From Aplysia californica (taxonomy: Eukaryota): 54,966 nt of DNA. Numbering within the stretch: position 1 is the first letter of the stretch; each line of letters opens with the position of its first letter. The position numbers and the translations under genes are program-made. A model generated the notes under the pieces. It saw only the letters and a program-made list of their open reading frames with translations, was not told the DNA's origin and did not search any database. The stretch lies in assembly GCF_000002075.1 (NCBI RefSeq), contig NW_004798204.1, positions 148,332-203,297 on the forward strand. The letters run 5' to 3'. Positions 23,883 through 23,958 of this stretch are shown piece by piece.

Positions 23883-23958
23883 GTCTTTTTAATCAGGCCT
23901 CGGTGTACAGTGTACTCTGAGACGGTCCCAAGCCCGTGGAAACTGAGAGGGAAAAGAC
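23883..23958 (+). ncRNA. Twister ribozyme (type P1), copy 1
   Basis: P1 GUCUUU/AAAGAC; UU^AA; P2 UCAG/CUGA; GC; P3 CUCGG-U-GUAC(AGU)GUAC-U-CUGAG; P4 ACGG/CCGU closing UCCCAAGC; GA then GGGA. Pseudoknots T1 UCCC:GGGA and T2 GC:GC. Confidence 0.92.

What the first reader, a model, noticed from the sequence alone, without database searches (positions are those of the whole stretch)
23883..23958. Consensus-perfect type-P1 twister ribozyme with no retrotransposon ORF next to it
All elements are present in order: P1 (6 bp), UU^AA, P2 UCAG/CUGA, GC, a 9-bp P3 hairpin, P4 ACGG/CCGU around UCCCAAGC, then GA and GGGA. T1 is fully Watson-Crick (UCCC:GGGA). P4 reads ACGG/CCGU where the rice ribozyme, from memory, has CCGG/CCGG, which is a compensatory pair. 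Predicted cuts are after U23890, 27939, 31966, 35988 and 40055. All five copies are identical, though at such low array divergence this is weak evidence of selection.
Basis: partly seen in the sequence, partly recalled or inferred. Interest (0 to 1): 0.8.

Follow-up and report, generated by a model that had tools for sequence, protein, structure and literature searches.

The report
Twister ribozyme behind tandem kinase genes
A well-formed self-cutting "twister" RNA sits about 810 bases behind each copy of a small sea-hare (Aplysia californica) protein-kinase gene. It has been preserved better than the gene's own coding sequence, so it is a rare, testable case of a ribozyme tied to an ordinary host gene rather than to a jumping gene.

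Summary
Window 23883-23958 and four identical copies match Rfam twister-P1 full length. Each scores 58.5 bits with E 1e-10 for the whole window, which is below the curated gathering score of 67.2. All helices, both pseudoknots and the U^A cut site are in place.

No retrotransposon ORF is nearby. Each 4.05-kb unit instead holds an intact three-exon, 284-aa protein-kinase gene with its own CCAAT and TATA boxes. The twister lies 814 nt after the stop codon on the sense strand.

Genome-wide, 39 of 43 twisters of this type follow a kinase paralogue on the same strand, and 35 of them lie 2.37-2.69 kb from the start codon. Between paralogues the twister is the best-conserved part of the unit. It shows 0 and 2 changes in 76 nt where synonymous divergence is 0.17 and 0.39. 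A second twister family, behind kinases only about 30% identical, differs by compensatory changes in P1, P2 and the T1 pseudoknot.

Best reading: a selected, cis-acting cutter in the distal 3' region of the kinase transcript. No RNA data could be obtained, so cleavage and its effect are inferred.

The scan had already found this pairing on other DNA of this genome (s1-721667). I reached the same result independently.

The parts
20255..41952 (+). Tandem array of about 5.5 units of about 4.05 kb (98-100% identical). Each unit holds kinase gene, 3' region, twister and spacer.
   Evidence: Self-BLAST of one unit. Each unit carries one N run of 237-296 nt at the same place. I did not fill these runs.
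23883..23958 (+). Type-P1 twister ribozyme, copy 1 (the finding). Predicted cut between U23890 and A23891. It follows kinase copy 1.
   Evidence: RF03160 at 58.5 bits, E 1.1e-10. The minimum-free-energy fold gives P1, P2, P3 and P4.
27932..28007 (+). Twister copy 2, cut after 27939. It lies 814 nt after the stop codon of kinase copy 2.
31959..32034 (+). Twister copy 3, cut after 31966.
35981..36056 (+). Twister copy 4, cut after 35988.
40048..40123 (+). Twister copy 5, cut after 40055. It is followed only by a truncated sixth kinase copy.
23840..23882 (+). Conserved block just 5' of the twister: ACUAAC motif(s), CCCAG, then the hairpin AGACG-uga-GCGCU-cggu-AGCGC-C. The outer 3' strand of the hairpin (CGUCU) overlaps the 5' strand of P1. 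The same block precedes each of the other four copies.
   Evidence: This block and the twister are the only DNA alignable to the 54%-identical paralogue arrays. The hairpin folds at -11.7 kcal/mol in the predicted 5' cleavage product. A comparable 5-bp hairpin (GACUU/AAGUC) precedes many family-2 twisters.
25415..25459 (+). Putative core promoter of kinase copy 2: inverted CCAAT box (GATTGG, 25415-25420) and TATAAA (25454-25459), 119 nt before the ATG.
   Evidence: Read directly from the sequence. Promoter function is inferred.
25573..26181 (+). Kinase copy 2, exon 1 (203 codons). Motifs HGDVKPAN, DLG and APE. Donor GTGCGT.
   Evidence: Pfam Pkinase 2.7e-27. Junctions come from NCBI paralogue models and GT-AG inspection. 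dN/dS is 0.2-0.28 against paralogues.
26629..26756 (+). Kinase copy 2, exon 2 (TDTYALGATLW...).
   Evidence: tblastn of NCBI models. Splice sites cacag| and |gtaagc.
27008..27125 (+). Kinase copy 2, exon 3, ending ...RFERFRVIIDCL-stop. The total product is 284 aa.
27126..27931 (+). 3' region between the stop codon and the twister (probable 3' UTR). Its only canonical poly(A) hexamer is ATTAAA at 27244, and that is not conserved in the closest paralogues.

Best explanation
**What it is.** The element is a genuine type-P1 twister self-cleaving ribozyme. It is a selected, cis-acting part of a lineage-expanded Aplysia kinase gene unit, not part of a mobile element.

**How it probably works.**
- Each unit is transcribed from its own promoter through the three kinase exons and about 0.8 kb of 3' region into the twister.
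- The RNA then cuts itself between U23890 and A23891, and at the equivalent sites in the other copies.
- The cut separates the kinase message from everything downstream. That includes any poly(A) signal, which lies within about 40-220 nt after the ribozyme in several subfamilies, and read-through towards the next unit.
- The upstream product would end in a conserved hairpin followed by UUUUU with a 2',3'-cyclic phosphate. The downstream product would start with a 5'-OH and keep almost the whole ribozyme.
- The net effect would be to set or trim the 3' end of the kinase mRNA, and so its stability or translation, and to insulate tandem genes from each other.

**Shown here:** the motif, its fold-consistent covariation, its fixed position behind the gene across paralogues, and its strong sequence conservation.

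**Inferred:** transcription through the site, cleavage in vivo, and the consequence for the mRNA.
For: - **Motif.** Full-length RF03160 matches, E 1.1e-10 each.
- **Structure.** On 13 distinct Aplysia twisters, 92.6% of structure cells are paired, against 26-53% when partners are slid. Nine pairs change on both sides: three in P1, three in P2, one in the T1 pseudoknot (C-G to U-A), one in P4 and one in P3, where the cross-family alignment is out of register.
- **Linkage.** 39 of 43 exact-core family-1 twisters have a kinase exon 1 upstream on the same strand, 35 of them at 2.37-2.69 kb.
- **3' side, not 5' side.** The divergent gene pair on contig C804 has one twister behind each gene and no further kinase paralogue listed on that contig behind either twister. 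This puts the ribozyme on the 3' side of its kinase.
- **Fixed distance.** Stop codon to cut site is 807-838 nt in five subfamily samples, 914-934 nt in two, 717 nt in one and 1390 nt in one. It is about 725 nt behind a kinase of about 30% identity carrying a family-2 twister.
- **Conservation.** The twister bin is the best-conserved 100 nt of the unit: 0.98, 0.93 and 0.80 against paralogues whose exon-1 bins score 0.89-0.98, 0.77-0.91 and 0.49-0.72. It shows 0/76 and 2/76 changes against dS of 0.17 and 0.39.
- **The genes are live.** dN/dS is 0.2-0.28 and the frames are open. Each has its own CCAAT and TATA boxes.
- **The upstream product matters.** Conservation extends 43 nt upstream into a hairpin that ends 9 nt before the cut, which points to the 3' end of the upstream product being important.
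- **Poly(A) signals.** Canonical signals lie 38-85 nt after the twister in the C127/C2028/C436/C688 subfamily. None lies between stop and twister in C804, C344, C170, C464 or C343.
Against: - **No RNA evidence.** The four public runs I laid behaved like low-coverage DNA, with no splice joints and with introns covered.
- **The window's own poly(A) hexamer.** The window has an ATTAAA 119 nt after the stop. The mature mRNA could end there, with the twister acting only on read-through RNA.
- **Intronic models.** Two NCBI models splice from a donor just before the stop codon across the twister to downstream exons. That would make the ribozyme intronic in those forms.
- **Rfam cut-off.** The Rfam score is below the gathering cut-off.
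- **Imperfect copies.** P3 carries U.U mismatches, and one copy (C343) has two further P3 mismatches.
- **Alternative to selection.** Conservation could in principle reflect short-tract gene conversion rather than selection.
Confidence: 0.55

Rival explanations
1. Intronic or read-through insulator. The kinase mRNA is normally polyadenylated upstream. The twister lies in read-through RNA, or in an intron of alternatively spliced or chimeric transcripts. Its job is to sever those so that tandem units do not yield fused messages or interfere with the next promoter.
For: - NCBI models P0029 (this window) and P0001 (C804) both use the donor AGG|GTAA 19 nt before the stop and jump over the twister.
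- 3' splice-site-like signals lie just before the ribozyme: ACUAAC...CCCAG in family 1, and a long pyrimidine tract plus CAG in C627/C2384.
- The window has an ATTAAA 119 nt after the stop.
Against: - The upstream ATTAAA is not conserved even in the 92%-identical C804 copies.
- Solitary and divergent genes with no listed kinase downstream keep the ribozyme.
- I could not check whether the chimeric models have RNA support.
Confidence: 0.15
2. 5'-end processing element. As in Schistosoma Perere-3 twister variants or R2 HDV-like ribozymes, the cut creates the 5' end of the downstream RNA (the next kinase message or an unannotated RNA), and the retained ribozyme helps its translation.
For: - Cleavage leaves nearly the whole ribozyme on the downstream product.
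- This is the only experimentally supported role I found for twister-type ribozymes in animals (PMC8501958). Ribozymes in viral 5' UTRs can support translation (PMC13725137).
Against: - The next ATG is 1.6 kb and 15 ATGs away, and it has its own CCAAT and TATA boxes.
- The distance from twister to next gene varies from 2.0 to 4.5 kb within one array, while the distance from gene to twister is constant.
- The C804 twisters have no listed kinase behind them.
- Conservation extends upstream, not downstream.
- The first kinase of the window array has no twister in the array sequence before it.
Confidence: 0.08
3. Retrozyme-like circle. Read-through transcription of the array, cutting at successive twisters and ligation would give a 4-kb circular RNA that encodes the kinase. 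This could be a source of protein or of new gene copies.
For: - There is one ribozyme per unit, all in one orientation, in long tandem arrays.
- P1 would bring the two ends of a unit-length RNA together.
Against: - Single and divergent copies keep the ribozyme although no second cut site exists upstream (C804, C464, C343).
- All copies keep their introns, so they were not made by reverse transcription of spliced RNA.
- Known metazoan retrozymes are short and non-coding (my own knowledge; PMC7761336 was listed but not read).
Confidence: 0.05
4. Neutral passenger or dead relic. The ribozyme was captured once, for example from a small transposon, before the family expanded. It is merely copied along with the gene.
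For: - Other twister copies in this genome lie in repeats with no kinase nearby (C102, C1589).
- An earlier scan note describes decayed twisters inside an old MITE.
Against: - 0-2 changes in 76 nt against an expected 13-30 at the synonymous rate.
- Conservation is above that of the exons.
- The few changes are mostly pair-preserving.
- Flanking non-coding DNA is unalignable at 54% protein identity while the ribozyme is 95% identical.
Confidence: 0.05

Closest known systems
Type-P1 twister ribozyme (Rfam RF03160; Roth et al. 2014, cited from PMC8501958)
   Same: Same helices P1, P2, P3 and P4, and the same T1 and T2 pseudoknots. The conserved loop GUCCCAAGCC, the GAGGG segment and the U^A cut site are all present, and the model match is full length.
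   Different: It scores 8.7 bits under the curated gathering cut-off. It has A-U at a P2 position where the consensus has C-G, and a long P3 with a U.U mismatch. It also has a conserved extra hairpin directly 5' of P1, which is not part of the Rfam model.
Discontinuous hammerhead ribozymes in the 3' UTRs of rodent Clec2 genes (summarised in PMC2950038)
   Same: A self-cleaving ribozyme embedded behind the coding region of a small, locally duplicated host gene family and conserved among paralogues or orthologues. It is thought to lower expression by cutting the message.
   Different: It belongs to a different ribozyme class and is continuous (76 nt) rather than split by hundreds of bases. Here the pairing spans dozens of paralogues down to about 30% protein identity. 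No reporter or RNA data exist yet.
Twister variants at the 5' end of Perere-3 non-LTR retrotransposons in Schistosoma mansoni (PMC8501958)
   Same: A twister-type ribozyme in an animal genome, present in many copies, with a proposed processing role in cis.
   Different: Those sit at the 5' junction of an element that encodes endonuclease and reverse transcriptase. Here no such ORF is in the unit, and the ribozyme follows a cellular-type kinase gene that has introns and its own promoter.
Retrozymes: tandem or LTR-borne hammerhead ribozymes that give circular RNAs (PMC4918200 and PMC7761336, listed, not read)
   Same: Tandem units, one ribozyme each, all in the same orientation.
   Different: The units here are 4 kb, protein-coding and intron-bearing. 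Solitary copies keep the ribozyme.

Membership tests
Twister ribozyme, type P1 (RF03160) | Statistically significant full-length match to the covariance model | tested here: met
   58.5 bits over model positions 1-68 of 68. E is 5e-13 locally and 1.1e-10 for the whole window against all families.
Twister ribozyme, type P1 (RF03160) | Rfam curated gathering score of 67.2 bits (an annotation cut-off, not a structural feature) | tested here: not met
   No hit at gathering. All 59 scored genomic copies are also below it, the best at 65.4 bits.
Twister ribozyme, type P1 (RF03160) | Nested helices P1, P2 and P4 (and optional P3) in type-P1 order, with the strand ends in P1 | tested here: met
   The minimum-free-energy fold reproduces them. 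Cells paired: P1 97.8%, P2 100%, P4 96.2%. Double-sided changes occur in P1 (3), P2 (3) and P4 (1).
Twister ribozyme, type P1 (RF03160) | Pseudoknots T1 (loop CCC with GGG 3' of P2) and T2 (GC after P2 with GC of the loop) | tested here: met
   Both are 100% paired in 13 distinct copies. The middle T1 pair covaries, C-G in 6 copies and U-A in 7. T2 is invariant, so it is uninformative.
Twister ribozyme, type P1 (RF03160) | Conserved catalytic-core nucleotides: U^A at the scissile site, the G directly 3' of P2, and the loop GUCCCAAGCC | tested here: met
   U23890/A23891, G23947 and GUCCCAAGCC align to the upper-case consensus positions. Their catalytic roles are from my own knowledge of the published structures.
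Twister ribozyme, type P1 (RF03160) | Site-specific self-cleavage giving 2',3'-cyclic phosphate and 5'-OH ends | not testable with these tools
   Needs in vitro transcription. The public runs laid gave no RNA ends.
3'-UTR ribozyme of a host mRNA (Clec2-type arrangement) | The ribozyme lies downstream of the stop codon on the sense strand, and this position is conserved among paralogues | tested here: met
   814 nt after the stop here, and 717-934 nt in eight of nine family-1 paralogue samples (1390 nt in C343). 39 of 43 are linked.
3'-UTR ribozyme of a host mRNA (Clec2-type arrangement) | The ribozyme is contained in the transcript of that gene | not testable with these tools
   No RNA run was identified. 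Records of this genome are withheld from the contig look-up.
Ribozyme at the 5' end of a non-LTR retrotransposon (Perere-3 or R2 type) | An endonuclease or reverse-transcriptase ORF directly downstream in the same unit | tested here: not met
   In the window unit only Pkinase is found among the ORFs. A LINE endonuclease fragment occurs only near a family-2 copy on another contig.
Retrozyme | A non-coding, non-autonomous repeat bounded by ribozymes, giving circular RNA | tested here: not met
   The unit encodes an intact, intron-bearing kinase under purifying selection. Solitary copies keep the ribozyme. Circular RNA was not testable.

The most novel reading that the evidence does not exclude
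The twister is the normal 3'-end maker of these kinase mRNAs. Fast co-transcriptional cleavage, just before the poly(A) signal emerges, releases a non-polyadenylated message. Its end is a conserved hairpin plus UUUUU with a 2',3'-cyclic phosphate. That end resembles a histone-mRNA or U6 3' end and could recruit a dedicated binding protein. This would be a ribozyme-based route of mRNA 3'-end formation used by a whole animal gene family. The competing pairing of the P1 5' strand with the upstream AGACG could serve as an on/off switch.
Probability: 0.15. Interest if true: 0.9.

Novelty: new variant of a known kind. Interest (0 to 1): 0.68.

Why it matters
The twister class was described in a 2021 paper as having "no confirmed biological function" (PMC8501958). 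The one supported animal role I found is in a retrotransposon.

Here the ribozyme is tied to dozens of live host genes. It sits at a fixed place behind the stop codon and is conserved more tightly than the protein. It also has a second, covarying family behind distant paralogues.

This gives a concrete system for asking what a twister does for a cellular mRNA. The organism is a laboratory animal, the cut site is known, and an obvious dead-mutant control exists. The possible roles are 3'-end formation, tail removal or insulation of tandem genes.

It also shows that Rfam's gathering cut-off misses all of these copies.

Tried and rejected
- **RNA evidence.** The look-up of sequencing runs listed no run on record as RNA. 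The four runs I laid on window 24881-28652 (3772 letters) covered introns, showed no splice joints and gave no molecule ends, so they behave as low-coverage DNA. The only signal was very high word depth on the twister bin, which reflects its many genomic copies.
- **Contig look-up.** A look-up for the NCBI paralogue protein P0002 returned nothing.
- **Other species.**
- Plankton (TARA/ENA, Logan) contigs with 45-53% identical kinases are under 2 kb and end too soon after the ORF. No twister was found in them.
- **Fetch limit.** Four family-1 twisters without a listed kinase (C170:730344, C244:922571, C344:109700, C436:202755) were therefore not inspected.
- **tRNA or SINE origin of the upstream block.** ARAGORN found nothing.
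- **snRNA-array idea.** The plankton contigs have U5 next to the kinase, but Aplysia U5 genes lie on other contigs.
- **My own error.** My first gapped genome pattern returned 0 because I set one gap too short. The plain core pattern then gave 89 hits against 0 in the control.
- **Literature.** Roth et al. 2014 is not held. Searches for twister with Aplysia, or with kinase and tandem, found nothing relevant.
- **Fold stability alone.** The z-score is only -1.6, so stability alone is not evidence.
- The joined three-exon protein was never sent to a search. The N runs were not filled.

Full report
**Observation**

The stretch 23883-23958 reads GUCUUUUU^AAUCAGGCC...GACGGUCCCAAGCCCGUGGAAACUGAGAGGGAAAAGAC. 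A gathering-threshold Rfam scan of the window returns nothing. An E-value scan gives a full-length match to RF03160 (twister-P1, model positions 1-68 of 68) at 58.5 bits. E is 5e-13 locally and 1.1e-10 when the whole window is scored against all 4227 families.

Exactly five such hits exist, at 23886, 27935, 31962, 35984 and 40051, all on the + strand. No other RNA family reaches E<=0.01. The 170 nt around the core are identical in the five copies.

The minimum-free-energy fold of the 76-mer reproduces P1, P2, P3 (5+4 bp with a U.U mismatch) and P4. Its z-score of -1.6 is not evidence on its own.

- P1 is 7 bp, not 6.
- The fourth T1 pair would compete with the innermost P1 pair.
- The motif is not quite consensus-perfect. 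It has A-U at a P2 position where the consensus has C-G, and one linker base differs. This is probably why it stays 8.7 bits under the gathering score.

**What surrounds it**

The five copies are one per unit of a 4.05-kb tandem array spanning 20255-41952 (98-100% identity). Each unit has one N run at the same place. Its left flank is CA-rich, so it is probably an assembly gap at a microsatellite. I did not fill it.

The only recognisable ORF in the unit is a protein-kinase domain (Pfam Pkinase 2.7e-27). Using NCBI paralogue models and GT-AG inspection, the gene of unit 2 is:
- exon 1, 25573-26181
- exon 2, 26629-26756
- exon 3, 27008-27125
- product of 284 aa

The motifs VIK, HGDVKPAN, DLG and APE are intact. 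An inverted CCAAT box (25415) and TATAAA (25454) lie 119 nt before the ATG. The twister cut site lies 814 nt after the stop codon on the sense strand. Five complete kinase copies are each followed by a twister. The truncated sixth copy is not.

Protein names from NCBI identify the genome as Aplysia californica. The window is contig C934 of a 927-Mb, 4332-contig assembly.

I searched exon 1 by reference only. The joined three-exon protein was never sent to a tool.

**The pairing holds across the gene family**

A whole-genome scan with RF03160 gave at least 59 hits, all under the gathering score. The exact core ACGGTCYCAAGCCCGT occurs 89 times, against 0 for the reversed control.

The copies fall into two main families:
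- **Family 1**, like the window: core CCC, P2 UCAG, long P3, 70 nt.
- **Family 2**: core CUC, P2 UGCA, short P3, 59-61 nt.

A few 52-nt minimal copies also occur.

Kinase exon-1 relatives were located with the window exon and with paralogue P0008. Of 43 family-1 twisters, 39 have a kinase exon 1 upstream on the same strand within 10 kb. For 35 of them the distance is 2.37-2.69 kb from the start codon.

On contig C804 two kinase genes lie head to head. Each has its own twister behind it, and no further kinase paralogue is listed on that contig behind either twister. The ribozyme therefore belongs to the 3' side of its gene, not to the 5' side of a following one.

The distance from stop codon to cut site is:
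- 807-838 nt in the window, C804, C344, C170 and C464 samples
- 914-934 nt in C127 and C2028
- 717 nt in C436
- 1390 nt in C343

A family-2 twister lies about 725 nt behind the stop of a kinase only about 30% identical in exon 1 (C627). Several other family-2 copies sit behind comparably distant kinases. Others lie in repeats with no kinase in view (C102, C1589).

**Selection**

When the window unit is aligned to paralogous units, the 100-nt bin holding the twister is the best-conserved part of the unit.

| Paralogue | Twister bin | Exon-1 bins |
|---|---|---|
| C804 | 0.98 | 0.89-0.98 |
| C344 | 0.93 | 0.77-0.91 |
| C127 | 0.80 | 0.49-0.72 |

In the C127 comparison the remaining non-coding DNA is at the level of unrelated sequence (0.35-0.5).

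By BLAST, only -43 to +76 relative to the start of P1 aligns between the window and the 54%-identical arrays. The twister itself is 94.7% identical.

Exon 1 has dN/dS of 0.20-0.28. Synonymous divergence is 0.17 (window against C804) and 0.39 (window against C344). The 76-nt twister shows 0 and 2 changes in the same comparisons. At the synonymous rate one would expect about 13 and 30.

**Fold-consistent variation**

On 13 distinct Aplysia twisters, the twister structure with both pseudoknots has 92.6% of cells paired. The figure is 26-53% when partners are slid by 1-3 columns. Nine pairs change on both sides: three in the outer part of P1 (GUC/GAC against ACA/UGU), three in P2, one in P4, one in P3 and the middle pair of T1 (C-G against U-A).

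Most of these changes separate the two families, so they represent few independent events. The P3 columns are not in register between families. Within family 1 the few changes are a G.U to A-U, a U-A to U.G, loop and linker changes, and one U-A to U.U in P3.

**The upstream block**

Conservation extends 43 nt upstream of P1. It covers one or two ACUAAC motifs, then CCCAG, then a hairpin AGACG-uga-GCGCU-cggu-AGCGC-CGUCU. The last four bases of the hairpin are the first four of P1.

In the full context, both the inner hairpin and the twister fold. In the predicted upstream cleavage product the extended hairpin forms at -11.7 kcal/mol and leaves a UUUU tail.

Family-2 copies in several different contexts carry a 5-6-bp hairpin with a different stem sequence (GACUU/AAGUC, loops varying) at the same place. 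A 52-nt copy has CAGAAG/CUUCUG. The C627/C2384 copies instead have a long pyrimidine tract and CAG six bases before P1.

I read this as a sign that the 3' end of the upstream product matters. A splice-acceptor reading of ACUAAC...CAG is also possible, and I could not test it.

**Poly(A) signals**

Between stop and twister there is no AATAAA or ATTAAA in the C804, C344, C170, C464 and C343 samples. The window's single ATTAAA (+119) is not conserved.

After the twister, canonical signals lie at +38 to +85 in the C127, C2028, C436 and C688 subfamily. They lie at about +150 in C804 and at +222 in the window, where an AGTAAA and a GU-rich tract also lie at about +70 to +120. None lies within 600 nt in the C344 type.

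The pattern suggests that the ribozyme lies just before the normal polyadenylation region, but it does not prove it.

**Mechanism**

The best-supported reading is a cis-acting cutter in the distal 3' region of the kinase transcript. It separates the message from the poly(A) region and from read-through into the next unit.

- **Shown:** motif, covariation, linkage, position, conservation.
- **Inferred:** transcription through the site, cleavage in vivo, and the effect on the mRNA.

Rivals:
- An intronic or read-through insulator. Two NCBI models, P0029 in this very array and P0001 on C804, splice from a donor 19 nt before the stop across the twister.
- A 5'-processing element of the Perere-3 kind (PMC8501958). 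This is disfavoured by the gene's own promoter, the variable downstream distance and the C804 pair.
- A retrozyme-like circle. This is disfavoured by solitary copies and retained introns.
- A neutral passenger. This is disfavoured by the conservation figures.

**Comparison with what is known**

Structurally this is a twister-P1 member. The genomic setting is closest to the hammerhead ribozymes in rodent Clec2 3' UTRs (PMC2950038), but with a different ribozyme class and a much larger paralogue set.

Full-text searches found no paper linking twister ribozymes to Aplysia or to a kinase family. A 2021 paper states that the class has no confirmed biological function apart from the retrotransposon case it reports.

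**Earlier scan notes**

After I had established the linkage, the scan's notebook showed three relevant notes:
- The same phenomenon had been reported on another piece of this genome (s1-721667).
- Another note describes decayed twisters in an old MITE (s1-758156), which fits some family-2 copies.

I could not reproduce the statement that the pairing also occurs in plankton DNA. The plankton contigs I reached are too short.

**Limits**

- No RNA data were available. The runs laid behaved as DNA.
- Counts from genome searches are lower bounds.
- Gene conversion cannot be formally excluded as a contributor to the conservation.

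Noticed in passing
L039:62-176, L040:126-240, L041:19-133: Marine plankton metagenome contigs carry a U5 snRNA gene (96-98 bits) about 490 nt upstream of a kinase ORF that is 45% identical to the window kinase. In Aplysia the U5 genes lie on other contigs.
   Followed up: partly
window 27100-27110 and 29659 (also L045:446-649): An older NCBI model (P0029, 357 aa) chains exon 3 of unit 2, from a donor AGG|GTAATC 19 nt before the stop, to exon 1 of unit 3. P0001 on C804 uses the same donor to reach a carbonyl-reductase-like exon 5.6 kb downstream. 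Both introns would contain the twister. I could not check RNA support.
   Followed up: partly
L001, L002 (C627, C2384), 6 nt before P1: The best-scoring twisters of the genome (65.4 bits) are preceded by CTAAT, a pyrimidine tract of about 30 nt and CAG. This is a textbook 3' splice-site look. Family 1 has ACUAAC...CCCAG at the matching place.
   Followed up: no
L053:1873, L053:7452 and L053:3868-4485: Family-2 twisters lie 5.6 kb apart on contig C102 with no kinase nearby. A LINE-type endonuclease ORF fragment (Exo_endo_phos_2, 2.8e-18) lies between them. Some family-2 copies may ride on mobile elements.
   Followed up: partly
window 5941-6819 (-) and 12503-13432 (-): ORFs with DUF7869 (1e-10) and an OTU-like cysteine protease domain (2.9e-5) lie upstream of the array. 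They are probably transposon-derived.
   Followed up: no
window 20518-20813, 24607-24880, 28653-28905, 32680-32926, 36702-36972, 40769-41005: N runs of 237-296 nt lie at the same position in every unit. The left flank runs into CA-rich sequence, so these are probably assembly gaps at a microsatellite. They were left unfilled.
   Followed up: no
window 27905-28030 in runs X14, X19: Word depth on the twister module is 110-457 against about 2-8 in most of the remaining bins in public DNA-like runs. Both the window variant and the C127-type variant are present. This is consistent with dozens of genomic copies of the 90-100-nt module.
   Followed up: partly
window 7282-7616: A 45-bp tandem repeat of 7.4 copies (95% matches) lies inside a 401-aa ORF on the minus strand.
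   Followed up: no
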